In this document: positions 10,090-64,000 of the stretch, one piece after another
How the letters are laid out: the number at the start of each line of letters is the position of its first letter
How positions within the stretch are numbered: the stretch's first letter is position 1
Assembly (NCBI GenBank): GCA_002269645.1
Contig: NIVC01002589.1
Span: forward strand, 1-64,000
Direction: 5' to 3'
DNA from: Macrostomum lignano
Lineage: Eukaryota
DNA: 64,000 nt
Notes under the pieces: generated by a model
Seen by the model: only the letters and a program-made list of their open reading frames with translations
Database searches by the model: none
What the model was told of the DNA's origin: nothing
Program-made: the position numbers and the translations under genes

Positions 10090-10102
10090 GCTGGCTGCTG
10101 AT

Positions 10103-16893: not shown

Positions 16894-16906
16894 ATCAGCA
16901 GCCAGC

Positions 16907-17173
16907 ATGTCGGGAACCAACGCCTCCAGCGAGCACATCAACCTGAAGGTGCAGGGCCAGGACGGGGCCGTGATCCACTTCAAGATCAAGAAGAACACCC
17001 CGCTGAGGAAGCTGATGACCACTTACTGCGATAGGCTGGGCCTTCGGGCACAGACCGTCCGCTTCATCTTCGACGGAAACAACGTGGAGGAGTCGGACAC
17101 CCCGGCCACGTTGGACATGGAGGAGAATGACACGATTGAAGTGTTCCAGTCTCAGGTCGGCGGCTGCGTGTGA
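16907..17173 (+). CDS. SUMO: SUMO, copy 2, intronless; protein identical to copy 1
   Basis: Same 88 aa; only one synonymous difference seen (Glu GAA vs GAG in DTIEVF). Confidence 0.95.
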
Positions 17174-17200
17174 GCAGCTGGGCTGTGCGACTCATTCTCG

Positions 17201-17988
17201 GTGACTGCTATGGGATGTCAGGGCGGTTGTTTTGGGGATTTGGGGAGTTTTTCCCACTGACTGCTATGGGGTGCCAGGGCGGTTGTTTTGGGGATTTGGG
17301 GAGTTTATCCCGCTGACTGCTATTGGGTGCCAGGGCGGTTGTTTTGGGGATTTGGGGAGTTTATCCCACTGACTGCTATGGGGTGTCAGGGCGGTTGTTT
17401 TGGGGATTTGGGGAGTTTTTCCCACTGACTGCTATTGGGTGTCAGGGCGGTTGTTTTGGGGATTTGGGGAGTTTATCCCACTGACTGCTATGGGGTGTCA
17501 GGGCGGTTGTTTTGGGGATTTGGGGAGTTTTTCCCACTGACTGCTATTGGGTGTCAGGGCGGTTGTTTTGGGGATTTGGGGAGTTTATCCCACTGACTGC
17601 TATTGGGTGTCAGGGCGGTTGTTTTGGGGATTTGGGGAGTTTATCCCACTGACTGCTATTGGGTGTCAGGGCGGTTGTTTTGGGGATTTGGGGAGTTTAT
17701 CCCACTGACTGCTATGGGGTGTCAGGGCGGTTGTTTTGGGGATTTGGGGAGTTTATCCCACTGACTGCTATGGGGTGCCAGGGCGGTTGTTTTGGGGATT
17801 TTAGGAGTTTATCCCGCTGACTGCTATTGGGTGCCAGGGCGGTTGTTTTGGGGATTTGGGGAGTTTATCCCACTGACTGCTATTGGGTGTCAGGGCGGTT
17901 GTTTTGGGGATTTGGGGAGTTTATCCCACTGACTGCTATTGGGTGTCAGGGCGGTTTTTTAGGGGGGTTGGAGAGGTTATCCCACTGA
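17201..17988. repeat. 56-bp G-rich minisatellite downstream of SUMO copy 2
   Basis: 14 units (GGGCGGTT markers at 17221 ... 17949, 56-bp period). Confidence 0.95.
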
Positions 17989-18865
17989 TTTATGTGAATT
18001 GCTGTTACCATGTTTATGTATTTTAGCGTTAGTACAACTCATTTTTAGGATATTGGATTTTCGCAGTTAACCACAGGCTTCTATGGGATTTTGTCTGTCT
18101 GAGAAACCTTGCTTGGATTGCCTGGTGTCCGATGCCCGATTCGAATGACCCACTGTAATAATTTTCTAACTTACCTGTTTAAATAATAACTCACGTCATG
18201 CAATGTGCGTTCTCAGCTAGTATTGTTAATAATATACACGAGTAATAAAACCGGCGAATTACATAATACCAGCTGTGCAGTGTTCGAATAATAATGTATC
18301 TATTTTTAGCACTTGCTCGCCCCTGTCTGTCGCAGTCTCCGTCTGTCTTGTAATTCTTTATTTTATCCGTTCGCTTTTTACATATATAATCTATCGTTTT
18401 TATGCACTTCTAAATTATTCGTAATTGTGAATAGTTATTCAGGCTTTTGAATTCGTGGGAACTTGTATCGCGTGTTACTACTGTTGTGGAGTAGCTGCTT
18501 TGGAAATATTCATACTAATTCAATACAAGAAGAAAAAATGATGTAATAATCCTAAAATATAAAGTCTCGGCTCGGTCATTCTTATTTGTACTTTTTTAAC
18601 ATCGACTTTGTGCAAAGAAATTCCTCTCTGCAATAAGCGTGTTTTAAGTTGTCAGTGACTTGGTGTACCCAAAATCTGTAGAAGAATCTCGGCCAATTTA
18701 AGTAGCAGGTTGCAATCGATTTCTAAGAAATGGGCAGTGATTCATTTGGATTTAGTATGCTCTCATCAAGAAAGCATATACATCGCTTAGTGTGGTTTAG
18801 CCATAGACAAATTCGGTCGACCGGATACTCGTATATCGACTGCATGGCCACTGCATTACCTAAGG

Positions 18866-20053: not shown

Positions 20054-21400
20054 TCAAGTTGCTGCCTCATCGGTTTGCTGAGCAGTCTTCGGCTCCCGAG
20101 TGTCCAAACTGATGGTCACCGGGCCACAGTTGGTGCTGCTGACTTCTATCATGGCGCCAAACACTCCGGCTTTGATTTTGTCCTCCTGGTAGTCTCGGCG
20201 CATCGATTCCAGGATGTCGGCGTACATCTTCTCGGCCTGGTCGGTGGCCATGGCGCGGCGGAAGTCCGGCTTGTTGCCCTGCCATGTTTTTTGAGAAAGA
20301 AATTGGGTTGGGCAACTGAGGATCTGGGAGGTTGGGCAACTGAGGATCTGGGAGGCTGGGCCAGACCTGAGGATCTGGGATTCTGGCCTAGCAACTGAGA
20401 ATCTGAGGCTGGCTCCCAGCAACTGAGGATCTGGGATTCTGGCCTAGCAACTGAGAATCTGAGGCTGGCTCCCAGCAACTGAGGATCTGGGATTCTGGCC
20501 TAGCAACTGAGAATCTGAGGCTGGCTCCCAGCAACTGAGGATCTGGGATTCTGGCCTAGCAACTGAGAATCTGAGGCTGGCACAGCAACTGAGGATCTGG
20601 GAGGCTGGCACAGCAACTGAGGATCTGGGAGGCTGGCACAGCAACTGAGGATCTGGGAGGCTGGCACAGCAACTGAGGATCTGGGATTCTGGCCTAGCAA
20701 CTGAGGATCTGGGAGGCTGGCATAGCAACTGAGGATCTGGGATTCTGGCCTAGCAACTGAGAATCTGAGGCTGGCTCCCAGCAACTGAGGATCTGGGATT
20801 CTGGCCTAGCAACTGAGAATCTGAGGCTGGCTCCCAGCAACTGAGGATCTGGGATTCTGGCCTAGCAACTGAGAATCTGAGGCTGGCACAGCAACTGAGG
20901 ATCTGGGAGGCTGGCACAGCAACTGAGGATCTGGGAGGCTGGCACAGCAACTGAGGATCTGGGATTCTGGCCTAGCAACTGAGGATCTGGGAGGCTGGCA
21001 TAGCAACTGAGGATCTGGGATTCTGGCCTAGCAACTGAGGATCTGGGAGGCTGGCTCAGAAACTGAGGATCTGGGAGGCTGGCCTAGCAACTGAGAATCT
21101 GGAGAATGGCGGTGGCCCAGCCTGAGTCACCTTGAGCGTCGCATGCAGCGTGAACTGGCTGACGACCAGCACCTCCAAGCCGAGATCCCGGACACTCTTC
21201 ATCCATCGTTTCCCACCCTGTTCGTCATTTTCGTCGAACAGCCGCAGGTTGAGCAACTTCTTGCTCATCCAGTCGGCGTCCTGAGCGGTGTCGGACTGGC
21301 AGATGCCCAGCAGGACGCAGATGCCCCGGCCAATTTCGCCTACGGTGGCCCCATCAACCACAACAGCAGCTCGGCTGACTCGCTGCACGATGGCTCGCAT
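20054..21400 (-). CDS. DTD1: D-aminoacyl-tRNA deacylase 1; exons 21131-21400 and 20054-20278 (164 aa)
   Basis: MRAIVQRV start, SQFTL motif, GNKPDF after splicing and the GPVT (Gly-cisPro) motif. The GT-AG phase-0 intron 20279-21130 joins TLK|GNK. Confidence 0.95.
20305..21118. repeat. Composite 27-29-bp minisatellite (ACTGAGGATCTGGG... family) filling the DTD1 intron
   Basis: Alternating GGAGGCTGGCACAGC / GATTCTGGCCTAGC / AATCTGAGGCTGGCTCCCAGC units with block duplications. Confidence 0.93.
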
Positions 21401-22529: not shown

Positions 22530-23318
22530 AGAAGATCTGGGAGACTGGCGGTGGCCCAGCAAATGAGCATCTGGGAGGCTGGCCCAACAACTGAGCATCT
22601 GGGAGGCTGGCCCAACAACTGAGCATCTGGGAGGCTGGCCCAACAACTGAGGATCTGGGAGGCTGGCCCAACAACTGAGCATCTGGGAGGCTGGCCCAAC
22701 AACTGAGCATCTGGGAGGCTGGCCCAGCAACTGAGCATCTGGGAGGCTGGCCCAACAACTGAGCATCTGGGGGGCTGGCCCAACAACTGAGCATCTGGGA
22801 GGCTGGCCCAACAACTGAGCATCTGGGAGGCTGGCCCAACAACTGAGCATCTGGGAGGCTGATGGCCCAGCAACTGAGCATCTGGGAGGCTGGCCCAACA
22901 ACTGAGCATCTGGGGGCTGGCCCAACAACTGAGCATCTGGGAGGCTGGCCCAACAACTGAGGATCTGGGAGGCTGGCCCAACAACTGAGGATCTGGGAGG
23001 CTGGCCCAACAACTGAGGATCTGGGAGGCTGGCCCAACAACTGAGCATCTGGGGGCTGGCCCAACAACTGAGCATCTGGGAGGCTGGCCCAACAACTGAG
23101 CATCTGGGAGGCTGGCCCAACAACTGAGGATCTGGGAGGCTGGCCCAACAACTGAGGATCTGGGAGGCTGGCCCAACAACTGAGGATCTGGGAGGCTGGC
23201 GGTGGCACAAAAACTGAGGATCTGAGATTTTGGTCTAGCAACAGAGGATCTGAGAGGATGTTCTAGCAACAGAGGATCTGAGAGGATGTTCTAGCAACTG
23301 AGGATCTGGAAGGTTGGC
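22530..23318. repeat. 28-bp minisatellite (ACTGAGSATCTGGGAGGCTGGCCCAACA)
   Basis: About 27 copies; same family as the DTD1 intron and 30505 arrays. Confidence 0.94.
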
Positions 23319-28332: not shown

Positions 28333-30159
28333 TTATACAATCCGATCAATGAAATTCGTATTCAGCAAGTAGTGCTCATAACAACATGGTCGTATCAAGC
28401 CACTATCCGACTTTTGCGGCCTTGAGAACGGATTTCGGTGCCACTTCCACGCCCTAAAGCCAAGGTCAAAGATGCCCAGAAGAATGCGAATATATCGATC
28501 ATATTTAGATTTTCTTCGAAAAAAGCCATCCGTATGAGTCTCAAAAAGAAACTGCTTCACTCTCGTCAGGCAGCCGTCCTGCAAAGCTTGCTCAAACGCA
28601 GCCCACTCCCAATATTCGACGTCAACTTTTAGAATATCTATTGTTCCATTTCCGGGCACAAGTTCTTGGAACAGATCACATAGAGTGCGCATCTTCCAGC
28701 CTTCCGGTGATGTCTTGTTGCTGAATGACAACCCTGATCGATAAAACCACGATGTCTTCCGACGCTTGTGATCATTCACTTTGGACATACTCGGATCGAA
28801 CATGAACACTCGGCAGTGAAATTTGTCGGCTAGCTCGTCATCGTACTTCCACATGTAGTTGATTCCAAAGGAAAACGCGGTGCACTGCTTCGCTGAATCA
28901 ATGCTGAACGGCTCACTGAAGCAGACATCCCAGCCACCATCGTTTTCTTCGCCGATCCGTCTGCTGTAAGGACAGAAAAGATGCTGCTGCTCCACCAGCT
29001 GAAAGTACAGGTGATCGAGTTGAGCTGGAGACATTGTGGTCAGGTTTGCTTGACGTACAGTCATCAGTTGGTCGAAGCCGGGGCTTCGGGAAATCGGGAG
29101 ATTCTTTAATGGAAGGTCGATCGTACTTTTAATTCTGTTTCTGAGTTGATGATTAACAGTAGTATTATGCAGGAAGTTGATGTTGATGTAGCTGACGCTG
29201 ATACCGGATGCGGTATCTAGTCGCATATTCCACTGTCGGAATCCAGCATTGTGCAGGCCAATCAGAGCAAGGATGCTACGAATGAGCTCTTTATTAGTCA
29301 GGGAACCTTTCCTGTTAGAGCTAATAGTCAGCACAAGCTGCTTCGTCAACACCAATGAACCATCGTTGGCAGCTGCCTCAAGTGATAACCAATCTTCTGG
29401 CCCGACATTAACCTTCAGCACGTCGATGACAGTTTGCTTGGCTTTGAATCGCTTCAGGTAGCCCTGATAGCTGTCAGATCTGACATTTCCTGCAGTCTGT
29501 GCGGCACTCAGGCCCTCCTTCAGAAGTATCACCTGGCTGCTGTGCATGTGGCTCGGCTGTTTCATCGTCGGGTCGAACACCAGCGCGTAGCAGCCGTGGC
29601 CGGCGGACAGATCCTCTTCGAAGCGCAATGAGGAGGACGCGCTGCCACCGAATGAGAAGCTGTAGCACGGCCGGCTGGGCTGGAACGGGCCCACCGTGCA
29701 CAAGCCGTGGCCAGCGCGTCTCCGATCAGCGACTGCTATTCGACGTCCGAATCGGCTGCTGATAGAGCAGTGCGCTGTCGGCCGCGTCACAATCTGCTCT
29801 AATTGAACTTCTAAGGTCTCCAATGCCATGCTGAACAGCCTGTGGTCTTCTAGCAGATTCGGGAACTGCTGGGTCGTCACGGATATGTTTCCGTTAGGCA
29901 GGCGGTACAGCACAGTCGATCCATCATGGCTAAGCACGGACTCAATGATCTTGTCTCTATGGGCATTGCTGACTGTCTCAGAGTGCTCTGGCTGAGCTAC
30001 TCTGCGCTGAAGCTTCAAGGTCAGAATAGTTGTCAGAAGCAGACTAACAAAAATAATCGCTGCTGTTCTTTGTCGGGACAGCTTTCTCAGGCAGGCGCAT
30101 TGCAGTAAGACTGACAGCGACTGAAGCTGAAACGTTTTCTTGCTGTATCGGTTTCTCAT
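28333..30159 (-). CDS. METTL24-like (Methyltransf_22/FkbM-type) protein with an N-terminal membrane anchor and two tandem domains; intronless, 608 aa
   Basis: C-terminal domain RIGEENDGGWDVC...FSFGIN...DD...CRVFMFDPS...IDILKVDVEYWEW...VKQFLFETH. A degenerate N-terminal copy reads YSFSFG..FEEDL..CYALVFDPT..IDVLKVNV. Hydrophobic IIFVSLLLTTILTL near the N-terminus. Confidence 0.85.
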   Translation of the reverse strand: MRNRYSKKTFQLQSLSVLLQCACLRKLSRQRTAAIIFVSLLLTTILTLKLQRRVAQPEHSETVSNAHRDKIIESVLSHDGSTVLYRLPNGNISVTTQQFPNLLEDHRLFSMALETLEVQLEQIVTRPTAHCSISSRFGRRIAVADRRRAGHGLCTVGPFQPSRPCYSFSFGGSASSSLRFEEDLSAGHGCYALVFDPTMKQPSHMHSSQVILLKEGLSAAQTAGNVRSDSYQGYLKRFKAKQTVIDVLKVNVGPEDWLSLEAAANDGSLVLTKQLVLTISSNRKGSLTNKELIRSILALIGLHNAGFRQWNMRLDTASGISVSYININFLHNTTVNHQLRNRIKSTIDLPLKNLPISRSPGFDQLMTVRQANLTTMSPAQLDHLYFQLVEQQHLFCPYSRRIGEENDGGWDVCFSEPFSIDSAKQCTAFSFGINYMWKYDDELADKFHCRVFMFDPSMSKVNDHKRRKTSWFYRSGLSFSNKTSPEGWKMRTLCDLFQELVPGNGTIDILKVDVEYWEWAAFEQALQDGCLTRVKQFLFETHTDGFFRRKSKYDRYIRILLGIFDLGFRAWKWHRNPFSRPQKSDSGLIRPCCYEHYLLNTNFIDRIV

Positions 30160-30504: not shown

Positions 30505-30802
30505 AAAAATCTGGGAGGCTGGCCCATGCAGCAACTGAGGATCTGGGAGGCTGGCCCATGCAGCAACTGAGGATCTGGGAGGCTGGCCCATGCAGCAACT
30601 GAGGATCTGGGAGGCTGGCCCAGCAACTGAGGATCTGGGAGGCTGGCCCATGCAGCAACTGAGGATCTGGGAGGCTGGCCCAGCAACTGAGGATCTCTGA
30701 GGCTGGCCTAGCAACTGACACTCTGGGAGGCTGGCACAGCAACTGAGGATCTGAGAGGCTGGCCCAGAAACTGAGGATCTGGGTGGCTGGCCCAGGAACT
30801 GA
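30505..30802. repeat. 28-31-bp minisatellite of the ACTGAGGATCTGGGAGGCTGGCCC family
   Basis: About 10 copies. Confidence 0.92.
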
Positions 30803-31307
30803 GATTATTTTCTCTGTGTATTTTCCTTGTATTTCTATTCTCAGTAGAGTATCAAATAAAAGTTCAGTATAATTTATACCACTTATTGTTGTTGATTGTA
30901 CACTGTATTTTAATTTATCTATTTGTTAGTTTTAGTACACTGTATTCTGTTGCGGTTCAGCCAAGTAAATATAAATATAATGGAGATGTCTATAGCTCAC
31001 AGCTCACTTAATGTCTTCTCAAGTACAACGGCAACTGCAATACACAACAGTGGTCACGATTATAATCTCATTATGCTCTTAAACCTTATCAACAACTTAA
31101 ACTTCCTTTTACGAAATGCTAGAGTTAATTATCTGCAATGTCCCCCTACACTATTGATAGTAGACGCAAGAGAGAAAGTAAACTTGCATTTGTTCGTAAA
31201 TGCAGAATATGAACAACCCAAGAGAGATAGGAAGTGCTCGGTCTTTGAGAACTAAATTGACAATCTCTCTGAGCTTTTGAATCGCAAATGAAGCAAGAAA
31301 ATGTAAA

Positions 31308-36187: not shown

Positions 36188-37669
36188 CTAGCAGGCCGGC
36201 TGCTTGTGGCCGCCAAACCTCAGCGGGCTGGATGCCGCCGCAGCCAGCAGGTGCAGCTTGCTGGCTGCCGACAACGGCGACCAGAGGCGGCGCAAGCGGT
36301 CCTGACAGGCCGGCGCCCGCTGCTGCTTAGCGACCAGGCCGGACTGGCGCAGGGCGCGGAGGCTGTCGCGCGGCGACCGGCGCGCCCGACGATGCCGGGA
36401 TAGCGACAGAGGCGGCGGCGGCTGCGGCTGCTGCGACGCCGGCGGCGGTGGAGTGGCGACTCTCGAAGGCAGCGCCGCGGCCGACTGGGCAAAGCGAAGC
36501 GCCTTCAGCGGCGCCGGCTGGAGCAGCTTTGTCGATGTTGTCGTCGAAGTCTCCGACTGCGGCGGGGTCGGCGCTGGCATCGGCTGAAGCTTCTTTCGGC
36601 CGCCGATCAGCGGCGTCCGCGCCGGGTCGAACCGGGCGAAAGTGGCGCCTCCTTCAACGTCGCCAGATGGAGCCGCCGCCGCCGCTGCTGATGCCGCCGC
36701 TGCCGTCGTTGCTCCGAGGGGGCTGCGGCTGCGGCTGCGACTCGCCAGGCGGGAGACGGCGCGGCCGAAAGCGGCGCGCAGCGCGCTGCCCAACGAAGCG
36801 GCGCGCTGCATGCTGCGCTGCTTTCGTTCCTGCTGTTGCTGCTGAGGATGAAGCTCCGATTGTCCAGCCTCCTCGGCCTCTTCTTCCTCATCGCAGCCGT
36901 ACTCAACAGCGTCGCTATCGGCAACTCCGACGCAGTCGCCGAATTCAACCAGCAGGGCGGCCAGGCGGGCGGAGCGGGCGGCCTCGGTCGGGGTGGCGGC
37001 GCCGCCGGTCAGGCAGGGCCCGAGGCAGACGGCCAGGTTGCCGGCGCTCATCCGGTTGACGTCGGATGCGGCGGCGACGCGGCTGAGGAAGCCGCACAGG
37101 AGGCGCAGCGAGTGCAGCTGGCGGAGCGGCAGCAGGAGGCTGGCCAGGCGGAGCGCGCGGACCCGGCGCTGAAGGCCGAGAGCGTCGGGCAGCAGGGCGG
37201 CCTCCGCCAGCCAGGCGGGCGCCAGTGGCTCCGGCAGCTCTCGCAGCCAGGCCTTCAGCACGGCGCTGACGTCGTGAGCCGGGGAGCCGTCGCGAATGCC
37301 GCAGCCCCGGTCCAGACGCAGGCGGAGGTCGCGCTGGCGGAGCCGGGAGCCTTCGAGGCGGAACAGGCCCTCGCAGCGGAGCCGGTCCTCGGCTGACAAG
37401 TAGCGGCAGCAGGCGGCGAGCACGGCGGGCACCTGGCCGATGCCTTCGACCATCGAGCTCGGCTGGTCCTCCAGACGTCGCCCGAAGCACCGGCTGGCGG
37501 CGGCAGGCGGCGGCGGCGGTGGCGGCAGCTGGCGTCGGCGCCAGTCCAGGCGCAGGCCAAATTGTCGTCGGAGCTCGCGCTCGGCGCCGCCCATCGCCCG
37601 CCGTCGGGACTCCGGCGACATCTGGCCGATGTAGTGCTGGCTGCTGGACTCAACAGTTTGCAGTGGCAT
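36188..37669 (-). CDS. RhoGAP-domain protein, ARHGAP11-like; single coding exon, 493 aa
   Basis: QVPAVLAACCRYL..EGLFRLEGS (arginine finger), DVSAVLKAWLRELPEPL and NRMSAGNLAVCLGP; low-complexity basic C-terminal tail. Confidence 0.88.
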   Translation of the reverse strand: MPLQTVESSSQHYIGQMSPESRRRAMGGAERELRRQFGLRLDWRRRQLPPPPPPPAAASRCFGRRLEDQPSSMVEGIGQVPAVLAACCRYLSAEDRLRCEGLFRLEGSRLRQRDLRLRLDRGCGIRDGSPAHDVSAVLKAWLRELPEPLAPAWLAEAALLPDALGLQRRVRALRLASLLLPLRQLHSLRLLCGFLSRVAAASDVNRMSAGNLAVCLGPCLTGGAATPTEAARSARLAALLVEFGDCVGVADSDAVEYGCDEEEEAEEAGQSELHPQQQQQERKQRSMQRAASLGSALRAAFGRAVSRLASRSRSRSPLGATTAAAASAAAAAAPSGDVEGGATFARFDPARTPLIGGRKKLQPMPAPTPPQSETSTTTSTKLLQPAPLKALRFAQSAAALPSRVATPPPPASQQPQPPPPLSLSRHRRARRSPRDSLRALRQSGLVAKQQRAPACQDRLRRLWSPLSAASKLHLLAAAASSPLRFGGHKQPAC

Positions 37670-44011: not shown

Positions 44012-44992
<981 letters not shown>

Positions 44993-46067
44993 CTCTTACG
45001 ACTGTCTGTGTGTTTAGCGGGACCTGAGTTATGTTAATGCGTTACGTGGACCACGCAATTCCGGTTAAAAAATAGAGTCTGTTTTGACAACGCGAAAGGC
45101 TAGCTAGGGTTATCTTTTTGTTAACTTGACGGAATAGCCAGTTCGGGGAAACTGTGGTGGTTCACTAACTACGTTTTGGGGACCGGGTTAGGTGGACCGC
45201 AAAAAACAGTTGGTTTAGTTAGACCTCTTTCGTTGTAGAAAATTTATTGCTTTAAACTGTTCTTTTGAACTAATTAAAACAGAAATTCTCAAAAAGAACA
45301 GATAAAAGGGTTACGACGTCATTTAATGAAAATATCCCAAGTTCAAACCAATTTATTTAGCATTACTAATCGGGTTAATCGGGTTAAACAAATGTACGAT
45401 CGCATTAGTTAGTTGCGTCGCGTGAATACAAGAAGGTGAATGAAAATAAAGCATTTTGAAAATAAATACCGAATCATATCACATACTAACTGTAAACTCA
45501 TTAAAACTAATTTAGGTCAAAATGTATGCTTCAAATACATGTTAACAAACGTAAAATTCCATTAGTTAAAAAAGGTCATCCGAGTACGAGCCTACAAGAA
45601 GTTGAAGGGCATTTTTAATAACGACAAAAGTTACTGAAACTGAAATTAAATTGATTTGACTACATCAGTCCTATTATACTGAATGAGTTGGTGAGCAATC
45701 ATATGATAAGCCAATCATTTTACCGACTTTCATCTTTTCGTTCACGCAGATGATGGCTTAATCTTCTAATTTTTTCTACGAAATAGTCTCCTGGACCTTC
45801 CCTGCTTCCGTGGTCCGGGACCGCTTCTGTTATTGATCTGTCATTGCCTCTCTCACGAATTTCAGCTTACTCAGCCATCGAATCCGCTTACGTCAGCTCA
45901 GCTCTATGATGAACCTTTCTATATTTCTCGTCAATTAGTGGTTTGAATCTTCTTTTACAGTTCGTTTTAACCTTCATCTCGGTGAAACGCAGTCAGTCTC
46001 GTCGAGCTCAGGCGAACAAAATCAACCACAGGCTCCTACAAAGGTAGAAAATAAAATTAACTGACAA

Positions 46068-49000
46068 TCAAACAGACACAGAAATCTGTTCCAGTTGTGT
46101 CTGTAGGTTATGTGCACCACCTGAGAGCCAGAGCCTCAAACAGACAGAGAAATCTGTTCGAGTTGTGTCTGTGGGTGAGGTGAACCACCTTCTGAGAGCC
46201 AAAGCCTCAAACAGACTGAGAGAGCTGCTTCAGTTGTGTCTATAGGTTATGTGTACCACCTAAGAGCCAGAGCCTCAAACAGACAGAGAAATCTGTTCGA
46301 GTTGTGTCTGTAGGTTAGGTGGACCACCTTCTGAGAGCCAAAGCCTCAAACAGACTGAGAGAGCTACTTCAGTTGTGTCTGTAGGTTATGTGGACCACCT
46401 AAGAGCCAGAGCCTCAAACATACAGAGAAATCTGTTCGAGTTGTGTCTGTAGGTTAGGTGGACCAGCTACTCCACAGCACTTCTAGGCGATAATCTGAGC
46501 CAGGAATCTCCGAGAGCCTCTCGTTACACATCCAGATGTTCTGCCTTGATGCTGGACTAGCTCACTTTCTAGGAATCTGTTCTGATTGCATTCTAACAAA
46601 ATGAAGCATTCTCGGCACTAAACTTTCTCGGCGGCTCTGAGATCCAGAGCCTCAAACAGACAGAAATCTGTTCGAGTTGTGTCTGTAGGTTAGGTGGACC
46701 AGCTACTCCACAGCACTTCTAGGCGATAATCTGAGCCAGGAATCTCCGAGAGCCTCTCTTTACACATTCAGATGTTCTGCCTTGATGCTGGACTAGCTCA
46801 CTTTCTAGGAATCTGTTCTGATTGCATTCTAACATACTGAAGCATTCTCGGCACTAAACTTTCTCGGCGGCTCTGAGAGCCAGAGCCTCAAACAGACAGA
46901 GAAATCTGTTCGAGTTGTTTCTGTAGGTTAGGTGGACCAGCTACTGAGAGCCAAATCCTCAAACAGACTGAGAGAGCTGCTTCAGTTGTGTCTGTAGGTT
47001 ATGTGGACCACCTAAGAGCCAGAGCCCTAAACAGACAGAGAAATCTGTTCGAGTTGTGTCTGTAGGTTAGGCGGACCAGCTACTCCACAGCACTTCTAGG
47101 CGATAATCTGAGCCAGGAATCTCCGAGAGCCTCTCCTTACACATCCAGATGTTCTGCCTTGATGCTGGACTAGCTCACTTTCTAGGAATCTGTTCTGATT
47201 GCATTCTAACAAACTGAAGCATTCTCGGCACTAAACTTTCTCGGCGGCTCTAAGAGCCAGAGCCTCAAACAGACAGAGAAATCTGTTCGAGTTGTTTCTG
47301 TAGGTTAGGTGGACCAGCTATTCTACAGCACTTCTAGGCGATAATCTGAGCCAGGAATCTCCGAGAGCCTCTCCTTACACATCCAGATGTTCTGCCTTGA
47401 TGCTGGACTAGCTCACTTTCTAGGAATCTGTTCTGATTGCATTCTAACAAACTGAAGCATTCTCGGCACTAAACTTTCTCGGCGGCTCTAAGAGCCAGAG
47501 CCTCAAACAGACAGAGAAATCTGTTCGAGTTGTTTCTGTAGGTTAGGTGGACCAGCTATTCTACAGCACTTCTAGGCGATAATCTGAGCCAGGAATCTCC
47601 GAGAGCCTCTCCTTACACATCCAGATGTTCTGCCTTGATGCTGGACTAGCTCACTTTCTAGGAATCTGTTCTGATTGCATTCTAACATACTGAAGCATTC
47701 TCGGCACTAAACTTTCTCGGCGGCTCTGAGAGCCAGAGCCTCAAACAGACAGAGAAATCTGTTCGAGTTGTTTCTGTAGGTTAGGTGGACCAGCTATTCT
47801 ACAGCACTTCTGGGCGATAATCTGAGCCAGGAATCTGCGAGAGCCTCTCTTTACACATTCAGATGTTCTGCCTTGATGCTGGACTAGCTCACTTTCTAGG
47901 AATCTGTTCTGATTGCATTCTAACATACTGAAGCATTCTCGGCACTAAGCTTTCTCGGCGGCTCTGAGAGCCAGAGCCCTAAACAGACAGAAATCTGTTC
48001 GAGTTGTTTCTGTAGGTTAGGTGGACCAGCTACTCCACAGCACTTCTAGGCGATAATCTGAGCCAGGAATCTCCGAGAGCCTCTCTTTACACATTCAGAT
48101 GTTCTGCCTTGATGCTGGACTAGCTCACTTTCTAGGAATCTGTTCTGATTGCATTCTAACATACTGAAGCATTCTCGGCACTAAACTTTCTCGGCGGCTC
48201 TGAGAGCCAGAGCCTTAAACAGACAGAGAAATCTGTTCGAGTTGTGTCTGTAGGTTAGGTGGACCAGCTACTGAGAGCCAAATCCTCAAACAGACTGAGA
48301 GAGCTGCTTCAGTTGTGTCTGTAGGTTATGTGGACCACCTAAGAGCCAGAGCCCTAAACAGACAGAGAAATCTGTTCGAGTTGTGTCTGTTGGTTAGGCG
48401 GACCAGCTACTCCACAGCACTTCTAGGCGATAATCTGAGCCAGGAATCTCCGAGAGCCTCTCCTTACACATCCAGATGTTCTGCCTTGATGCTGGACTAG
48501 CTCACTTTCTAGGAATCTGTTCTGATTGCATTCTAACAAACTGAAGCATTCTCGGCACTAAACTTTCTCGGCGGCTCTAAGAGCCAGAGCCTCAAACAGA
48601 CAGAGAAATCTGTTCGAGTTGTTTCTGTAGGTTAGGTGGACCAGCTATTCTACAGCACTTCTAGGCGATAATCTGAGCCAGGAATCTCCGAGAGCCTCTC
48701 TTTACACATTCAGATGTTCTGCCTTGATGCTGGACTAGCTCACTTTCTAGGAATCTGTTCTGATTGCATTCTAACATACTGAAGCATTCTCGGCACTAAA
48801 CTTTCTCGGCGGCTCTGAGAGCCAGAGCCTCAAACAGACAGAGAAATCTGTTCGAGTTGTTTCTGTAGGTTAGGTGGACCAGCTATTCTACAGCACTTCT
48901 GGGCGATAATCTGAGCCAGGAATCTCCGAGAGCCTCTCTTTACACATTCAGATGTTCTGCCTTGATGCTGGACTAGCTCACTTTCTAGGAATCTGTTCTG

Positions 49001-52000
49001 ATTGCATTCTAACATACTGAAGCATTCTCGGCACTAAGCTTTCTCGGCGGCTCTGAGAGCCAGAGCCCTAAACAGACAGAAATCTGTTCGAGTTGTGTCT
49101 GTAGGTTAGGTGGACCAGCTACTCCACAGCACTTCTAGGCGATAATCTGAGCCAGGAATCTCCGAGAGCCTCTCTTTACACATTCAGATGTTCTGCCTTG
49201 ATGCTGGACTAGCTCACTTTCTAGGAATCTGTTCTGATTGCATTCTAACATACTGAAGCATTCTCGGCACTAAACTTTCTCGGCGGCTCTGAGAGCCAGA
49301 GCCTTAAACAGACAGAGAAATCTGTTCGAGTTGTGTCTGTAGGTTAGGTGGACCAGCTACTGAGAGCCAAATCCTCAAACAGACTGAGAGAGCTGCTTCA
49401 GTTGTGTCTGTAGGTTATGTAAACCACCTAAGAGCCAGAGCCCTAAACAGACAGAGAAATCTGTTCGAGTTGTGTCTGTAGGTTAGGCGGACCAGCTACT
49501 CCACAGCACTTCTAGGCGATAATCTGAGCCAGGAATCTCCGAGAGCCTCTCCTTACACATCCAGATGTTCTGCCTTGATGCTGGACTAGCTCACTTTCTA
49601 GGAATCTGTTCTGATTGCATTCTAACAAACTGAAGCATTCTCGGCACTAAACTTTCTCGGCGGCTCTAAGAGCCAGAGCCTCAAACAGACAGAGAAATCT
49701 GTTCGAGTTGTTTCTGTAGGTTAGGTGGACCAGCTATTCTACAGCACTTCTAGGCGATAATCTGAGCCAGGAATCTCCGAGAGCCTCTCTTTACACATTC
49801 AGATGTTCTGCCTTGATGCTGGACTAGCTCACTTTCTAGGAATCTGTTCTGATTGCATTCTAACATACTGAAGCATTCTCGGCACTAAACTTTCTCGGCG
49901 GCTCTGAGAGCCAGAGCCTCAAACAGACAGAGAAATCTGTTCGAGTTGTTTCTGTAGGTTAGGTGGACCAGCTATTCTACAGCACTTCTGGGCGATAATC
50001 TGAGCCAGGAATCTCCGAGAGCCTCTCTTTACACATTCAGATGTTCTGCCTTGATGCTGGACTAGCTCACTTTCTAGGAATCTGTTCTGATTGCATTCTA
50101 ACATACTGAAGCATTCTCGGCACTAAGCTTTCTCGGCGGCTCTGAGAGCCAGAGCCCTAAACAGACAGAAATCTGTTCGAGTTGTGTCTGTAGGTTAGGT
50201 GGACCAGCTACTCCACAGCACTTCTAGGCGATAATCTGAGCCAGGAATCTCCGAGAGCCTCTCTTTACACATTCAGATGTTCTGCCTTGATGCTGGACTA
50301 GCTCACTTTCTAGGAATCTGTTCTGATTGCATTCTAACATACTGAAGCATTCTCGGCACTAAACTTTCTCGGCGGCTCTGAGAGCCAGAGCCTTAAACAG
50401 ACAGAGAAATCTGTTCGAGTTGTGTCTGTAGGTTAGGTGGACCAGCTACTGAGAGCCAAATCCTCAAACAGACTGAGAGAGCTGCTTCAGTTGTGTCTGT
50501 AGGTTATGTAAACCACCTAAGAGCCAGAGCCCTAAACAGACAGAGAAATCTGTTCGAGTTGTGTCTGTAGGTTAGGCGGACCAGCTACTCCACAGCACTT
50601 CTAGGCGATAATCTGAGCCAGGAATCTCCGAGAGCCTCTCCTTACACATCCAGATGTTCTGCCTTGATGCTGGACTAGCTCACTTTCTAGGAATCTGTTC
50701 TGATTGCATTCTAACAAACTGAAGCATTCTCGGCACTAAACTTTCTCGGCGGCTCTAAGAGCCAGAGCCTCAAACAGACAGAGAAATCTGTTCGAGTTGT
50801 TTCTGTAGGTTAGGTGGACCAGCTATTCTACAGCACTTCTAGGCGATAATCTGAGCCAGGAATCTCCGAGAGCCTCTCCTTACACATCCAGATGTTCTGC
50901 CTTGATGCTGGACTAGCTCACTTTCTAGGAATCTGTTCTGATTGCATTCTAACATACTGAAGCATTCTCGGCACTAAACTTTCTCGGCGGCTCTGAGAGC
51001 CAGAGCCTTAAACAGACAGAGAAATCTGTTCGAGTTGTGTCTGTAGGTTAGGTGGACCAGCTACTGAGAGCCAAATCCTCAAACAGACTGAGAGAGCTGC
51101 TTCAGTTGTGTCTGTAGGTTATGTGGACCACCTAAGAGCCAGAGCCCTAAACAGACAGAGAAATCTGTTCGAGTTGTGTCTGTAGGTTAGGCGGACCAGC
51201 TACTCCACAGCACTTCTAGGCGATAATCTGAGCCAGGAATCTCCGAGAGCCTCTCCTTACACATCCAGATGTTCTGCCTTGATGCTGGACTAGCTCACTT
51301 TCTAGGAATCTGTTCTGATTGCATTCTAACAAACTGAAGCATTCTCGGCACTAAACTTTCTCGGCGGCTCTAAGAGCCAGAGCCTCAAACAGACAGAGAA
51401 ATCTGTTCGAGTTGTTTCTGTAGGTTAGGTGGACCAGCTATTCTACAGCACTTCTAGGCGATAATCTGAGCCAGGAATCTCCGAGAGCCTCTCCTTACAC
51501 ATCCAGATGTTCTGCCTTGATGCTGGACTAGCTCACTTTCTAGGAATCTGTTCTGATTGCATTCTAACATACTGAAGCATTCTCGGCACTAAACTTTCTC
51601 GGCGGCTCTGAGAGCCAGAGCCTCAAACAGACAGAGAAATCTGTTCGAGTTGTTTCTGTAGGTTAGGTGGACCAGCTATTCTACAGCACTTCTGGGCGAT
51701 AATCTGAGCCAGGAATCTCCGAGAGCCTCTCTTTACACATTCAGATGTTCTGCCTTGATGCTGGACTAGCTCACTTTCTAGGAATCTGTTCTGATTGCAT
51801 TCTAACATACTGAAGCATTCTCGGCACTAAGCTTTCTCGGCGGCTCTGAGAGCCAGAGCCCTAAACAGACAGAGAAATCTGTTCGAGTTGTTTCTGTAGG
51901 TTAGGTGGACCAGCTACTCCACAGCACTTCTAGGCGATAATCTGAGCCAGGAATCTCCGAGAGCCTCTCTTTACACATTCAGATGTTCTGCCTTGATGCT

Positions 52001-55000
52001 GGACTAGCTCACTTTCTAGGAATCTGTTCTGATTGCATTCTAACATACTGAAGCATTCTCGGCACTAAACTTTCTCGGCGGCTCTGAGAGCCAGAGCCTC
52101 AAACAGACAGAGAAATCTGTTCGAGTTGTTTCTGTAGGTTAGGTGGACCAGCTATTCTACAGCACTTCTAGGCGATAATCTGAGCCAGGAATCTCCGAGA
52201 GCCTCTCCTTACACATCCAGATGTTCTGCCTTGATGCTGGACTAGCTCACTTTCTAGGAATCTGTTCTGATTGCATTCTAACATACTGAAGCATTCTCGG
52301 CACTAAACTTTCTCGGCGGCTCTGAGAGCCAGAGCCTCAAACAGACAGAGAAATCTGTTCGAGTTGTTTCTGTAGGTTAGGTGGACCAGCTATTCTACAG
52401 CACTTCTGGGCGATAATCTGAGCCAGGAATCTCCGAGAGCCTCTCTTTACACATTCAGATGTTCTGCCTTGATGCTGGACTAGCTCACTTTCTAGGAATC
52501 TGTTCTGATTGCATTCTAACATACTGAAGCATTCTCGGCACTAAGCTTTCTCGGCGGCTCTGAGAGCCAGAGCCCTAAACAGACAGAGAATCTGTTCGAG
52601 TTGTTTCTGTAGGTTAGGTGGACCAGCTACTCCACAGCACTTCTAGGCGATAATCTGAGCCAGGAATCTCCGAGAGCCTCTCTTTACACATTCAGATGTT
52701 CTGCCTTGATGCTGGACTAGCTCACTTTCTAGGAATCTGTTCTGATTGCATTCTAACATACTGAAGCATTCTCGGCACTAAACTTTCTCGGCGGCTCTGA
52801 GAGCCAGAGCCTTAAACAGACAGAGAAATCTGTTCGAGTTGTGTCTGTAGGTTAGGTGGACCAGCTACTGAGAGCCAAATCCTCAAACAGACTGAGAGAG
52901 CTGCTTCAGTTGTGTCTGTAGGTTATGTGGACCACCTAAGAGCCAGAGCCTAAACAGACAGAGAAATCTGTTCGAGTTGTGTCTGTAGGTTAGGCGGACC
53001 AGCTACTCCACAGCACTTCTAGGCGATAATCTGAGCCAGGAATCTCCGAGAGCCTCTCCTTACACATCCAGATGTTCTGCCTTGATGCTGGACTAGCTCA
53101 CTTTCTAGGAATATGTTCTGATTGCATTCTAATAAACTGAAGCATTCTCGGCACTAAACTTTCTCGGCGGCTCTGAGATCCAGAGCCTCAAACAGACAGA
53201 AATCTGTTCGAGTTGTGTCTGCAGGTTAGGTGGACCAGCTACTCCAAAGCACTTCTAGGCGATAATCTGAGCCAGGAATCTCCGAGAGCCTCTCTTTACA
53301 CATTCAGATGTTCTGCCTTGATGCTGGACTAGCTCACTTTCTAGGAATCTGTTCTGATTGCATTCTAACATACTGAAGCATTCTCGGCACTAAACTTTCT
53401 CGGCGGCTCTGAGAGCCAGAGCCTTAAACAGACAGAGAAATCTGTTCGAGTTGTGTCTGTAGGTTAGGTGGACCAGCTACTGAAAGCCAAATCCTCAAAC
53501 AGACTGAGAGAGCTGCTTCAGTTGTGTCTGTAGGTTATGTGGACCACCTAAGAGCCAGAGCCTCAAACAGACAGAGAAATCTGTTCGAGTTGTTTCTGTA
53601 GGTTAGGTGGACCAGCTATTCTACAGCACTTCTAGGCGATAATCTGAGCCAGGAATCTCCGAGAGCCTCTCTTTACACATTCAGATGTTCTGCCTTGATG
53701 CTGGACTAGCTCACTTTCTAGGAATCTGTTCTGATTGCATTCTAACATACTGAAGCATTCTCGGCACTAAACTTTCTCGGCGGCTCTGAGAGCCAGAGCC
53801 TCAAACAGACAGAGAAATCTGTTCGAGTTGTTCTGTAGGTTAGGTGGACCAGCTATTCTACAGCACTTCTGGGCGATAATCTGAGCCAGGAATCTCCGAG
53901 AGCCTCTCTTACACATTCAGATGTTCTGCCTTGATGCTGGACTAGCTCACTTTCTAGGAATCTGTTCTGATTGCATTCTAACATACTGAAGCATTCTCGG
54001 CACTAAGCTTTCTCGGCGGCTCTGAGAGCCAGAGCCCTAAACAGACAGAAATCTGTTCGAGTTGTTCTGTAGGTTAGGTGGACCAGCTACTCCACAGCAC
54101 TTCTAGGCGATAATCTGAGCCAGGAATCTCCGAGAGCCTTTCTTTACACATTCAGATGTTCTGCCTTGATGCTGGACTAGCTCACTTTCTAGGAATCTGT
54201 TCTGATTGCATTCTAACATACTGAAGCATTCTCGGCACTAAACTTTCTCGGCGGCTCTGAGAGCCAGAGCCTTAAACAGACAGAGAAATCTGTTCGAGTT
54301 GTGTCTGTAGGTTAGGTGGACCAGCTACTGAGAGCCAAATCCTCAAACAGACTGAGAGAGCTGCTTCAGTTGTGTCTGTAGGTTATGTGGACCACCTAAG
54401 AGCCAGAGCCCTAAACAGACAGAGAAATCTGTTCGAGTTGTGTCTGTAGGTTAGGCGGACCAGCTACTCCACAGCACTTCTAGGCGATAATCTGAGCCAG
54501 GAATCTCCGAGAGCCTCTCCTTACACATCCAGATGTTCTGCCTTGATGCTGGACTAGCTCACTTTCTAGGAATATGTTCTGATTGCATTCTAATAAACTG
54601 AAGCATTCTCGGCACTAAACTTTCTCGGCGGCTCTGAGATCCAGAGCCTCAAACAGACAGAAATCTGTTCGAGTTGTGTCTGCAGGTTAGGCGGACCAGC
54701 TACTCCACAGCACTTCTAGGCGATAATCTGAGCCAGGAGTCTCCGAGAGACTTTCGTTACACATCCAGATGTTCTGCCTTGATGCTGGACTAGCTCACTT
54801 TCTAGGAATATGTTCTGATTGCATTCTAACAAAATGAAGCATTCTCGGCACTAAACTTTCTCGGCGGCTCTGAGAGCCAGAGCCTTAAACAGACAGAGAA
54901 ATCTGTTCGAGTTGTGTCTGTAGGTTAGGTGGACCACCTTCTGAGAGCCAAAGCCTCAAACAGACTGAGAGAGCTGATTCAGTTGTGTCTGTAGGTTAGG

Positions 55001-55015
55001 TGGACCAGCTTCTCT
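46068..55015. repeat. 9-kb complex satellite of 238(236)-bp monomers interspersed with 71+68-bp pairs; higher-order repeats of 1089 and 615 bp
   Basis: GAGCCAGAG markers at 47254, 47492 and 47730 (238 apart). The recurring 61-aa pseudo-ORF is spaced 1089, 1089, 1704 (=1089+615) and 714 (=3x238). Confidence 0.97.
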
Positions 55016-56402
55016 ACAGCAATTGAGTTGCAGGCCTTGCAGCTAGCTACTTTGAGATCATCAAACGAAACTCACTTTTCTGGACTCGGTGTCGACGGAT
55101 TTGCGAGCGATTTGCGATTTTCACCAGGCGATGCGGCTTCTTCGATTTCGCAGTGGCTTTTTGTGACGGTGTTTTTTTAGTTTTTATTTTAGGCCTGGCG
55201 TCCTTTTTTGCGGGTCATCATATCTTGGTTGTAGATTACAGTTTTTGGCACAATAAATTTATATATGGATGAAACTTGGAGTAAGGATTAACATTAGACC
55301 TATTAAGTATAAAAAAACGTTCTAATCTATACAATTGCAGTCCTTTAGAGTTGTATAGTATGGATTATAAGTACTTTCTTTTAAACTGTCTGTGTCTGGT
55401 CTCACTACGCCATGGTTTACGTGGACCACCCGCTTAGACATTATATATCCCTCTCTCCACTGTCTTACCTTCAGAACGCTTGCGGGTTTCCTATTGGCTG
55501 CGGTCGGTCCCATTGTTGGGGTGGATCTATCCTCCTAAGTGTTAACCAGCCAATTATAGATAGGGAGGTCTGTCTGTCTGTCTGTTCCAACCCTATACTC
55601 CTGCACATGTGTTTACGTGGACCAAACAGACAGTGAGTGTTAGGCTGACTGTTAATGCGTTCTTAGTTTTACTGGGACCGCAATCAAGTCGACCTTTTGC
55701 TAGAGAGTCAGAGACCCGATCGCTAGCTAAAAGGCCCTTCTTAATTGCGTCCTCTTGATCAAATCTTTTGCATGTACATGTATGAATTGTCCTTTTCAAT
55801 TAGGTAAATTGCATCTTCAACTTTGCACTTGAAAGGCTGCAGCTTAGGATCTTCTTCTTCCAACATTGGAGGAGGATAGAACAGGATATCCCATAGTGTT
55901 TAGGATAGAATTGGCAAGCACTTAATTCATGAAGTTGCTATTTTCTTCTTGTGTAATGGTAGAGCCTCAGAAATTCGCATTTACACAGTGTGGCTATCAA
56001 GGACCACTGGGAGTTCTTGAGAAGTCATTGAAGAATACTGTTTAGGCTTCACTTAAATATCTTTCTTGTCTCGGAGTCTTTATCGTTTGATCTGGTTAGC
56101 GAATTGGATTTCTTTACGTTGGTGTCTTACTCTGTGAGTCTGTGCTCAGAGTACGATACCGGAATTGCTGGAACTGAGCTAATTAAATGGAGTTTAAAGT
56201 TTACTGTATCAAATTCATTTCGCATACGAGGTTTCAGAATTTTTAATTAACCTGCGTACCTACTTGAATGTCAAAGAACTGAACGCATATTGTTTTAAAG
56301 CCAGTAGCGGTCATAAATGATGCCAACATAGCCCTTTGTTCGTAAGGTAATGATCTGTAAAAAATTCAGTTTTGCATCGAATCTATGCTTAATAACTGCT
56401 AT

Positions 56403-56444
56403 ACACAAACAGACACAAACAGACACAAACAGACACAAACAGAC
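56403..56444. repeat. 10-bp repeat (ACACAAACAG)x4
   Basis: Direct reading. Confidence 0.8.
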
Positions 56445-56749
56445 GATTTTCGAAAAATTTTCTAAAATTTTTCGGTTTACGTGGACCAGACTCGCTCGTT
56501 TAGGTAGACCAGGCTGGAGGTCCAGCTAAACTGAAATGCAAATAACTTTGGAAAAAACCATGCTAGACATCCCAAAATTGCTTAAGCCTTTCTTGACCCG
56601 CCTGACATTAATGTGAGATCCTCATCAACGTCTTAACCCCACCAGAGACAAAATTATTTGGTGGTCCACCTAAGTGGTCTACCTACACCGGTGGTCCAGC
56701 TAACGAGGCTACTGAACTTCCAAAAAGTCCACGTAAACACACAGACAGT

Positions 56750-64000
<7,251 letters not shown>

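What the first reader, a model, noticed from the sequence alone, without database searches (positions are those of the whole stretch)
46068..55015. Satellite monomer appears to be built from the element's own terminal motif
Seen: every subunit contains TGTCTGTAGGTTAGGTGGACC, which resembles the terminus TGTCTGTGTGTTTACGTGGAC(C), preceded by AAACAGACAG, which resembles the opposite terminus ACACAGACAGT. Inference: the satellite arose by tandem amplification of juxtaposed element ends, which would create dozens of binding sites for the cognate transposase or a host protein.
Basis: partly seen in the sequence, partly recalled or inferred. Interest (0 to 1): 0.7.

Follow-up and report, generated by a model that had tools for sequence, protein, structure and literature searches.

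The report
Transposon-borne satellite carrying the element's end motif
A 9-kb tandem repeat sits inside what looks like a non-coding cut-and-paste transposon lodged in an (ACAG)n microsatellite of an invertebrate genome, and every repeat unit carries one copy of the short motif reiterated at the transposon's ends; this is a clear example of a known route from transposon to satellite DNA, not a new kind of system.

Summary
The array is real: 46068-55015 holds 54 subunits (68, 71 and 238 bp), all on the + strand, with a 1089-bp higher-order repeat at 99-100% identity.

It lies in an 11.7-kb non-coding island (45001-56749). The island is bounded by inverted repeats of about 55 nt and embedded in one (ACAG)n array.

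The part of the observation that holds is the core motif (G)TTA[C/G]GTGGACC.
- A weight matrix built only from 11 sites in the unique arms scores all 54 subunits at 10 bits or more (median 20.8).
- Nothing in the 52 kb outside the island exceeds 8.9 bits.
- The chance of such a site in one 238-nt monomer is about 2e-5.

The parts that do not hold:
- Pairwise similarity to the terminal 30-mers is marginal (P 0.04 and 0.10).
- It disappears once the CTGT part is removed (P 0.28 and 0.62).
- "AAACAGACAG resembles the opposite terminus" is not significant (0.035-0.07 expected per monomer).
- That segment has no reverse-oriented motif next to it.

Best reading: an internal, motif-bearing segment of a non-autonomous inverted-repeat element expanded in place by unequal exchange. 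An origin from juxtaposed ends is possible but not shown. This is a new member of a known kind, and interest is modest.

The parts
44015..44992 (+). Left flanking (ACAG)n microsatellite, about 245 units at 90% matches
   Evidence: TRF. It has the same orientation as the right flank and shares with it the rare interruption ACATTAAG.
45001..45054 (+). Left terminal inverted repeat. The outer 23 nt are ACTGTCTGTGTGTTTAGCGGGAC, followed by a second motif copy, GTTACGTGGACCAC.
   Evidence: Inverted repeat I3 is 23 nt at 87%. The gapped alignment to the right end extends to about 55-60 nt with z = 6.3.
45001..46067 (+). Left unique arm. It is AT-rich and non-coding, with 4 motif copies, all on the + strand (45014, 45042, 45188, 45215).
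   Evidence: No Pfam hit in any of six frames. Frame 1 has 27 stop codons.
46068..55015 (+). Satellite array of 54 subunits. The unit string is bababLLabLLLLLabLLLLabLLLLabLLabLLLLLLLabLLabLLLabLLab (L = 238 bp, a = 71 bp, b = 68 bp). There is a 1089-bp higher-order repeat.
55016..56749 (+). Right unique arm, non-coding, with 10 motif copies. Five are on + (55417, 55613, 55669, 56477, 56500) and five on - (56519, 56663, 56676, 56693, 56726).
55386..55431 (+). Internal left-end-like copy: ACTGTCTGTGT, then 19 nt, then GGTTTACGTGGACCAC
   Evidence: Read directly from the sequence. It shares an exact 15-mer with 56474-56488.
55565..55685 (+). Second internal left-end-like copy. It runs (GTCT)5, then TGTGTTTACGTGGACC, then AAACAGACAGT, then TGTTAATGCGTT and TTTTACTGGGACCGCAAT.
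   Evidence: Gapped alignment to the left end has z = 4.7, and 1 of 300 shuffles reached the observed score. Inverted repeats I1 and I10 pair it with the right end and its flank.
56474..56749 (.). Terminal fold-back segment of about 275 bp with motif copies in both orientations
   Evidence: I2 and I4. DNA fold of -34.5 kcal/mol with z = -2.1.
56691..56749 (-). Right terminal inverted repeat. The outer part is GTCCACGTAAACACACAGACAGT and the inner motif is GGTGGTCCAGCTAAC.
56750..64000 (+). Right flanking (ACAG)n microsatellite, at least 7.2 kb, running to the end of the window
   Evidence: TRF gives 1823 units at 96% matches. Interruption spectrum.

Best explanation
The 11.7-kb island at 45001-56749 is a non-autonomous DNA element with terminal inverted repeats, or the remains of a small cluster of such elements. 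It sits inside a pre-existing (ACAG)n microsatellite.

Its ends and subterminal regions carry a reiterated, near-palindromic motif of 11-17 nt, gGTT(T)A[C/G]GTGGACCAc, with core GTGG-A-CCAC. By analogy with the subterminal repeats of other inverted-repeat transposons, this is most likely the binding site of the cognate transposase.

One internal segment of about 68 nt carrying a single such motif became tandemly duplicated.
- A 139-bp a+b dimer layer survives at the more divergent left edge of the array.
- A 238-bp version came to dominate.
- A 1089-bp higher-order unit (LLLLab) was then amplified very recently by unequal exchange.

The result is 54 same-orientation motif copies making up 76% of the island.

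Shown: the array, the inverted repeats, the motif family and its restriction to the island, the higher-order structure, and the absence of coding capacity.

Inferred: mobility, protein binding to the motif, the order of the duplication steps, and any titration or silencing effect.
For: - Inverted termini lie exactly at the two microsatellite borders. The outer 23 nt match at 20 of 23, and the alignment extends to about 55-60 nt with two motif copies per end (z = 6.3).
- The motif family is confined to the island. There are 14 copies in the 2.8 kb of arms plus 54 in the array. Elsewhere in the window there are none at 1 mismatch or fewer, and no matrix score above 8.9 bits.
- The arms-only matrix scores satellite units at a median of 20.8 bits, inside the range of the training sites (15.9-24.2). 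The chance of this per monomer is about 2e-5.
- All satellite motifs share the orientation of the left-arm motifs.
- Adjacent 1089-bp units are 99-100% identical, and the edge units are more divergent, as expected for unequal exchange.
- The 71-bp unit equals the 238-bp unit minus about 167 bp.
- Array length is n x 238 plus about 68 bp, and the last unit runs about 35 nt into the L-specific part before unique sequence begins. This fits recombination between two pre-existing copies of the short unit.
- The arms are non-coding.
- The left (ACAG)n runs opposite to the (CTGT)2 of the left terminus, so it is not an outgrowth of that terminus. Both flanks share the rare interruption ACATTAAG, which fits one array split by an insertion.
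- Satellites arising from inverted repeats or internal arrays of DNA transposons are documented (PMC12628747, PMC4079207, PMC3879986).
Against: - No target-site duplication could be found at any of several terminus registers.
- Only one copy is available, so repetitiveness and mobility are untested.
- No transposase was found in the window.
- The right arm holds three extra left-end-like motif groups in + orientation. The island may therefore be a composite rather than a single element.
- Outside the motif, the monomer has no significant similarity to the arms.
- The motif is not visibly more conserved than the rest of the monomer. Positions 2 and 16 of the 21-mer are among the variable sites.
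Confidence: 0.5

Rival explanations
1. The ancestral monomer was a junction of two element ends: a right end, a short filler or flank, and a left end. Such a junction could come from a tandem dimer, a nested insertion or a circle junction. It was then amplified.
For: - The order within the 68-nt unit is AAACAGACAG, then 18 nt, then TGTCTGT-AGG-TTAGGTGGACC. That is right-end-like followed by left-end-like.
- The array's left border starts exactly at TCAAACAGAC.
- TGTCTGT lies immediately upstream of the motif, as it does at both true termini, whereas the inner motif copies lack it.
- Transposon tandem dimers created by insertion preference, and circle junctions with filler, are documented routes (PMC5932611, PMC5907723).
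Against: - The right-end-like part is 10 nt of essentially ACAG-type sequence, expected 0.035-0.07 times per monomer. The same 10-mer occurs twice elsewhere.
- No reverse-oriented motif precedes it.
- Sequence beyond the motif does not match the sequence inside either terminus.
- The motif context fits the inner motif of the right inverted repeat equally well.
- The monomer contains no other part of the element, unlike true tandem dimers.
Confidence: 0.2
2. The island is a modular stack of several small microsatellite-targeted inverted-repeat elements, comparable to plant SaTar or mt-MITE clusters. Only one of them carries the satellite, so the 11.7-kb 'element' is a composite. This reading is compatible with the best explanation for the satellite itself.
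For: - There are four +-oriented left-end-like motif groups (45001, 55386, 55608, 56474) but only one right end.
- Microsatellite remnants lie between the modules: CTGTCTGT at 55386, (GTCT)5 at 55565-55586 and (ACACAAACAG)4 at 56403-56444.
- The last 275 bp fold back as a miniature element.
- No target-site duplication is visible, as is often the case for microsatellite-targeted MITEs (PMC5907723).
- The island is flanked on both sides by one microsatellite type.
Against: - No matching right ends exist for the internal left ends.
- Similarities among the left-end copies are short and partly driven by the motif itself (z = 3-4.7).
- Subterminal motifs in both orientations are also normal within single elements. 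This point rests on general knowledge of CACTA and hAT elements, not on a test made here.
Confidence: 0.25
3. The island is not a transposon. It is a locally evolved complex repeat island within a microsatellite. The motif would be a host-protein or structural site, and the terminal symmetry would come from an inverted duplication.
For: - Only a single copy is available, with no target-site duplication and no transposase.
- The window is saturated with unrelated minisatellites and has another large inverted structure.
- The inverted similarity between 55565-55622 and the right end extends into the flanking microsatellite (I1 and I10).
Against: - The inverted repeats coincide precisely with both microsatellite borders.
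- Each inverted repeat has two motif copies at similar spacing, 28 versus 33 nt.
- Clustering of the motif in opposite orientations at the two extremities is the classic architecture of transposon ends.
Confidence: 0.15
4. The resemblance between monomer and termini is due to chance plus shared ACAG-type sequence.
For: Pairwise alignment of the terminal 30-mers to the monomer is marginal, and non-significant once the CTGT part is removed.
Against: The arms-only matrix test gives about 2e-5 per monomer, and there are no hits anywhere else in the window. The monomer shares an exact 13-mer with 45186-45198 and an exact 12-mer with 56662-56673.
Confidence: 0.02

Closest known systems
Tetris foldback element and its TIR-220 satellite in Drosophila virilis (PMC4079207)
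   Same: Both are non-autonomous inverted-repeat elements whose own internal tandem repeats were amplified into kb-sized satellite-like arrays.
   Different: Tetris carries its repeats inside both long inverted repeats, in inverted orientation. Here the array is single, in one orientation, central, and about 1 kb in from the left end. The inverted repeats are only about 55 nt.
Tandem-repeat-containing MITEs of bivalves, DTC84 and the pearl family (PMC3879986)
   Same: Both have short inverted ends around a central array of core repeats. Both are associated with a tetranucleotide-type microsatellite. In both, each repeat carries a palindrome or hairpin.
   Different: In DTC84 the microsatellite lies inside the element at one end of the array, there are at most about 5 core repeats, and the putative target-site duplication is AA. 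Here the microsatellite lies outside both inverted repeats, there are 54 units, and no AA duplication is present. A repeat unit that contains the end motif is not described for DTC84 in the abstract read.
Microsatellite-targeted Mutator-like MITEs of plants: SaTar, Micron, MuTAnT, Ac-mMITE and TAFTA (PMC5907723, PMC8449440, PMC4486113)
   Same: In both, an inverted-repeat element is flanked on both sides by one microsatellite. Target-site duplications are often absent or unreadable. Adjacent or modular clustering occurs. Expansion of the flanking microsatellite after insertion has been reported.
   Different: Those elements are in plants, are mostly in (TA)n, measure 0.4-1.7 kb, and are not described with large internal satellites. 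Here the host is an animal, the microsatellite is (ACAG)n, and there is a 9-kb internal array. Superfamily is unknown, and targeting cannot be tested from a single locus.
Transposon tandem dimers formed by double insertion that seed satellites, such as hobo and Bari1 (PMC5932611)
   Different: In that model the repeating unit is a whole element with complete ends. Here the unit is 68-238 bp with one motif and no other element sequence.

Membership tests
Class II non-autonomous element with terminal inverted repeats (MITE-like) | Terminal inverted repeats at both boundaries | tested here: met
   The outer 23 nt match at 20 of 23, extended to about 55-60 nt with gaps (z = 6.3).
Class II non-autonomous element with terminal inverted repeats (MITE-like) | Target-site duplication flanking the inverted repeats | tested here: not met
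   The flanks are ..CTCTTACG | ACTGTCTG.. and ..CAGACAGT | AGAACAGA... No duplication appears at registers 0 to 2. Only the right side has TA. Decay or microsatellite instability could have hidden it.
Class II non-autonomous element with terminal inverted repeats (MITE-like) | Multiple dispersed copies, and a cognate autonomous element with a transposase | not testable with these tools
   No second copy exists in the window. The source genome is absent from the searchable collections.
Class II non-autonomous element with terminal inverted repeats (MITE-like) | No coding capacity of its own | tested here: met
   The longest ORF in the arms is 74 aa. There are no Pfam hits in six frames.
Foldback elements (FB, Tetris) | Long inverted arms built of tandem repeats in opposite orientation | tested here: not met
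   All 54 units are on the + strand and there is no inverted partner array. A true structure of this kind lies elsewhere in the window, at 9386-18001.
Bivalve-type tandem-repeat MITEs (DTC84, pearl) | A microsatellite inside the element next to the core-repeat array, and an AA target-site duplication | tested here: not met
   The microsatellites lie outside the inverted repeats, and the array borders are unique sequence. There is no AA duplication.
Microsatellite-targeted MITEs (SaTar-like) | The family preferentially inserts in microsatellites, while some members elsewhere have 8-11 bp target-site duplications | not testable with these tools
   This one locus is flanked on both sides by one (ACAG)n array with shared rare variants, which is consistent. 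A preference can only be shown with many copies.
Transposon tandem dimer or array (double insertion) | The repeating unit is a whole element, and each junction has a complete right end and a complete left end | tested here: not met
   The unit is 68-238 bp. The right-end-like part is 10 nt with no reverse-oriented motif.
Satellite DNA | A long head-to-tail array with homogenised monomers or a higher-order repeat | tested here: met
   The array is 8.9 kb. L-unit mean pairwise identity is 96.8%. The 1089-bp higher-order repeat is 99-100% identical between neighbours.
Satellite DNA | High genomic abundance or multiple arrays | not testable with these tools
   Only one window is available.

The most novel reading that the evidence does not exclude
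This would be an animal inverted-repeat element that homes to (ACAG)n microsatellites because its own termini mimic the target. Its end-junction, either a circle junction with filler or reversed ends, would have been amplified into a satellite. That would give a direct, mechanistically readable path from transposon to satellite, and a 54-site sink for its own transposase.
Probability: 0.08. Interest if true: 0.6.

Novelty: new member of a known kind. Interest (0 to 1): 0.3.

Why it matters
Satellites that arise from DNA transposons are known, but examples where every monomer demonstrably keeps the element's reiterated end motif are few. Here that is shown with a test that is independent of the satellite.

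If the motif is the transposase-binding site, the array is a natural experiment in binding-site titration. It is also a tractable case of how a subterminal repeat becomes a satellite.

The (ACAG)n context hints at microsatellite targeting, which so far is documented mainly for plant Mutator-like MITEs. With only one locus available, none of this goes beyond a well-characterised example.

Tried and rejected
Searches for relatives:
- Exact-protein look-ups of four window ORFs found nothing.
- The methyltransferase ORF found no homologues.
- A metagenome scan for the satellite 19-mer gave two hits, both unrelated chance matches in GC-rich and coding-like contexts.
- Scans of viral contigs and GTDB genome contigs gave nothing.

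Searches within the window:
- BLAST of the two arms and of the monomer consensus against the masked window gave only motif-sized matches of 12-16 nt.
- Gapped alignments of the monomer to 220-310 nt of each end were not significant.

Coding capacity:
- The six X-masked frames gave no Pfam hit.
- There are no Rfam families and no tRNAs in the window.

Other ideas tested:
- I looked for target-site duplications of 2, 3, 4 and 8 bp at several terminus registers and found none.
- I looked for a reverse-oriented motif in the monomer that would make AAACAGACAG a real right end. The only minus-strand hits are the palindromic site itself.
- I asked whether the motif is more conserved than the rest of the monomer and saw no sign of it.
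- I considered that the flanking (ACAG)n grew out of the termini. This is rejected for the left side because of orientation and remains possible for the right side.


Full report
**Setting.**
- The window is eukaryotic and unusually rich in minisatellites. TRF returns 83 rows covering dozens of unrelated arrays.
- Three ORFs give Pfam hits: an ABCC/MRP-type ABC transporter, an FkbM-type methyltransferase and a RhoGAP.
- The RhoGAP ORF finds only two proteins, both from the flatworm Macrostomum lignano, at 45-46% identity.
- The ABC ORF's best named hits are spiralian animals, with M. lignano at 54%.
- The source is therefore an invertebrate, probably a spiralian and possibly a flatworm. Its genome is not in the searchable collections.

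**What is at the coordinates.**
- 46068-55015 is a head-to-tail array.
- The unit string is bababLLabLLLLLabLLLLabLLLLabLLabLLLLLLLabLLabLLLabLLab, where L is 238 bp, a is 71 bp and b is 68 bp.
- Consensus sequences are given. The 71-bp unit is the 238-bp unit without about 167 bp.
- L units average 96.8% pairwise identity.
- Between 47500 and 50500, neighbouring 1089-bp blocks (LLLLab) are 99-100% identical. The last rounds of amplification were therefore very recent and happened at the level of the higher-order unit.
- Units at the left edge are the most divergent, with 2-3 mismatches in the 21-mer. This is the usual pattern for arrays that evolve by unequal exchange.

**The surrounding island.**
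- The array lies in an 11,749-bp island, 45001-56749.
- The island's outer 23 nt are inverted repeats: ACTGTCTGTGTGTTTAGCGGGAC against the reverse complement of GTCCACGTAAACACACAGACAGT, matching at 20 of 23.
- With gaps, the inverted similarity extends to about 55-60 nt. It includes a second motif copy on each side at similar spacing (z = 6.3).
- The island is bracketed by (ACAG)n on both sides, in the same orientation: 44015-44992, and 56737 to beyond 64000.
- The two arrays share the rare interruption ACATTAAG.
- The left (ACAG)n runs opposite to the (CTGT)2 of the left terminus, so it cannot be an outgrowth of that terminus.
- The simplest reading is one microsatellite split by an insertion.
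- No target-site duplication is visible.
- The two unique arms (1067 and 1734 bp) have no ORF above 74 aa and no Pfam signal in any frame.

**The motif.**
- TTA[CG]GTGGACC occurs in the window only inside the island.
- Allowing 1 mismatch, TTAGGTGGACC occurs 9 times in the 2.8 kb of arms and not once in the 43.9 kb upstream.
- The map of arm copies is as follows.
  - Left arm: 45014, 45042, 45188, 45215, all on +.
  - Right arm, + strand: 55417, 55613, 55669, 56477, 56500.
  - Right arm, - strand: 56519, 56663, 56676, 56693, 56726.
- The aligned copies give gGTT(T)A[C/G]GTGGACCAc, with TTA and GAC invariant.
- The site is near-palindromic. It reads TTAGGTGG-A-CCACCTAA in the short units and at 56657-56675, with core GTGG-A-CCAC.
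- The last 275 bp of the island fold back on themselves with motif copies in both orientations.

- The terminal 30-mers align to the monomer with P = 0.04 (right) and P = 0.10 (left).
- After the CTGT component is removed, P = 0.28 and P = 0.62.
- Longer stretches of either end do not align significantly (P 0.03-0.16).

A test that does not use the satellite at all is decisive the other way.
- A weight matrix was built from the 11 best arm sites only.
- It scores all 54 subunits at 10 bits or more and 49 at 16 bits or more, with a median of 20.8. The training sites themselves score 15.9-24.2.
- Nothing outside the island exceeds 8.9 bits.
- A random 238-nt monomer would contain a 20-bit site with probability of about 2e-5.
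- The monomer therefore does carry the island's reiterated end motif.

Whether it carries the outer terminus specifically is less clear.
- TGTCTGT directly precedes the motif, as at both true termini.
- But 17 of the 54 units read TTTCTGT.
- The context aligns about as well to the inner motif of the right inverted repeat: TTCAGTAG[CCTC]GTTAGCTGGACCA against TTCTGTAG-GTTAGGTGGACCA.

**The 'opposite terminus'.**
- AAACAGACAG is present 25-28 nt upstream of the 21-mer in every unit, exact in 41 of 54.
- Its 9-of-11 match to ACACAGACAGT is expected 0.035-0.07 times per monomer from the rest of the window.
- The identical 10-mer occurs at 9139 and 13396 in unrelated sequence.
- It is not preceded by the reverse-oriented motif that forms part of the real right end.
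- It does form a 7-bp hairpin with TGTCTGT (z = -2.2 for the 68-nt unit and not significant for the 71-nt unit). This resembles the palindrome reported in each core repeat of the clam MITE DTC84 (PMC3879986).

**Extra left-end-like copies.**
- The right arm contains ACTGTCTGTGT, then 19 nt, then GGTTTACGTGGACCAC at 55386.
- At 55565-55685 it contains a longer copy: (GTCT)5, TGTGTTTACGTGGACC, AAACAGACAGT, TGTTAATGCGTT and GGGACCGCAAT.
- This longer copy aligns with the left end at z = 4.7. It forms inverted repeats with the right end and its flank (I1 and I10).
- The island may therefore be a composite of adjacent small elements. Microsatellite-targeted MITEs of plants are known to cluster by adjacent insertion (PMC5907723, PMC8449440).

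**Mechanism.**
- I commit, at about 0.5, to in-place expansion of an internal motif-bearing segment of a non-autonomous inverted-repeat element by unequal exchange.
- I take the motif to be the putative transposase-binding site.
- Array length is n x 238 plus about 68 bp, and the last unit runs about 35 nt into the L-specific sequence before unique DNA begins. This fits recombination between two pre-existing short units about 170 bp apart.
The order of right-like then left-like sequence and the array's left border fit it, but the right-like half has no statistical or structural support.
- A titration or silencing role for the 54 sites is untested inference.

**Comparison and novelty.**
- Reviews state that satellites can arise from the inverted repeats or central parts of DNA transposons, and from expansion of short internal arrays (PMC12628747).
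- Tetris (PMC4079207), DTC84 (PMC3879986), double-insertion dimers (PMC5932611) and microsatellite-targeted MITEs (PMC5907723, PMC8449440, PMC4486113) each share some features. None fits in full (see Membership tests).
- This is a new member of a known kind. It is a well-supported example, but not surprising to a specialist.

Noticed in passing
window 9386-18001: A large foldback-like structure. The inverted arms are 9386-10495 and 16082-18001, with 1110 nt at 97% complementarity. Each arm is built of a 56-mer array plus a 71-mer array. The centre is 5.6 kb and AT-rich, with GC 0.30-0.36. This is the classic foldback or Tetris-type architecture, which the satellite under study lacks.
   Followed up: partly
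window 46376-46396, 56657-56675 and other motif copies: The reiterated motif is near-palindromic. It reads TTAGGTGG-A-CCACCTAA, with core GTGG-A-CCAC, which suggests a dimeric DNA-binding protein.
   Followed up: partly
window 44015-44992 and 56757-64000: The two flanking (ACAG)n arrays share the rare interruption ACATTAAG, once on the left and three times on the right. ACAC is the commonest variant in both. The right array is at least 7.2 kb and runs off the window.
   Followed up: partly
window 13391-13420: CAAACAGACAGAAAGTCTGT, in the AT-rich centre of the foldback structure, matches the satellite's CAAACAGACAGAGAAATCTGT at 19 of 21 positions (E = 0.17, not significant). Small ACAG/CTGT hairpins may be a recurrent by-product of this microsatellite.
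   Followed up: no
window 3973-4223: A (TGTC)n array, the same tetranucleotide in the opposite orientation, lies directly after the ABCC/MRP-like ORF at 2839-3972. There is no element motif nearby.
   Followed up: no
window 20312-21102, 22552-23308, 30509-30803: One 28-mer minisatellite family (GCAACTGAGGATCTGGGAGGCTGGCCCA) recurs at three places. Many other unrelated arrays of 18-71-nt units fill the first 43 kb.
   Followed up: no
window 28333-30159 (-): A 608-aa ORF has Methyltransf_22 and FkbM domains, but no homologue was found at E of 1e-5 or lower among 5.8 billion proteins by the word-seeded search.
   Followed up: no
window 36188-37669 (-): An intronless 493-aa RhoGAP ORF lies in a 66% GC block. 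Its only hits are two Macrostomum lignano proteins at 45-46% identity. This is the best clue to the source organism.
   Followed up: partly
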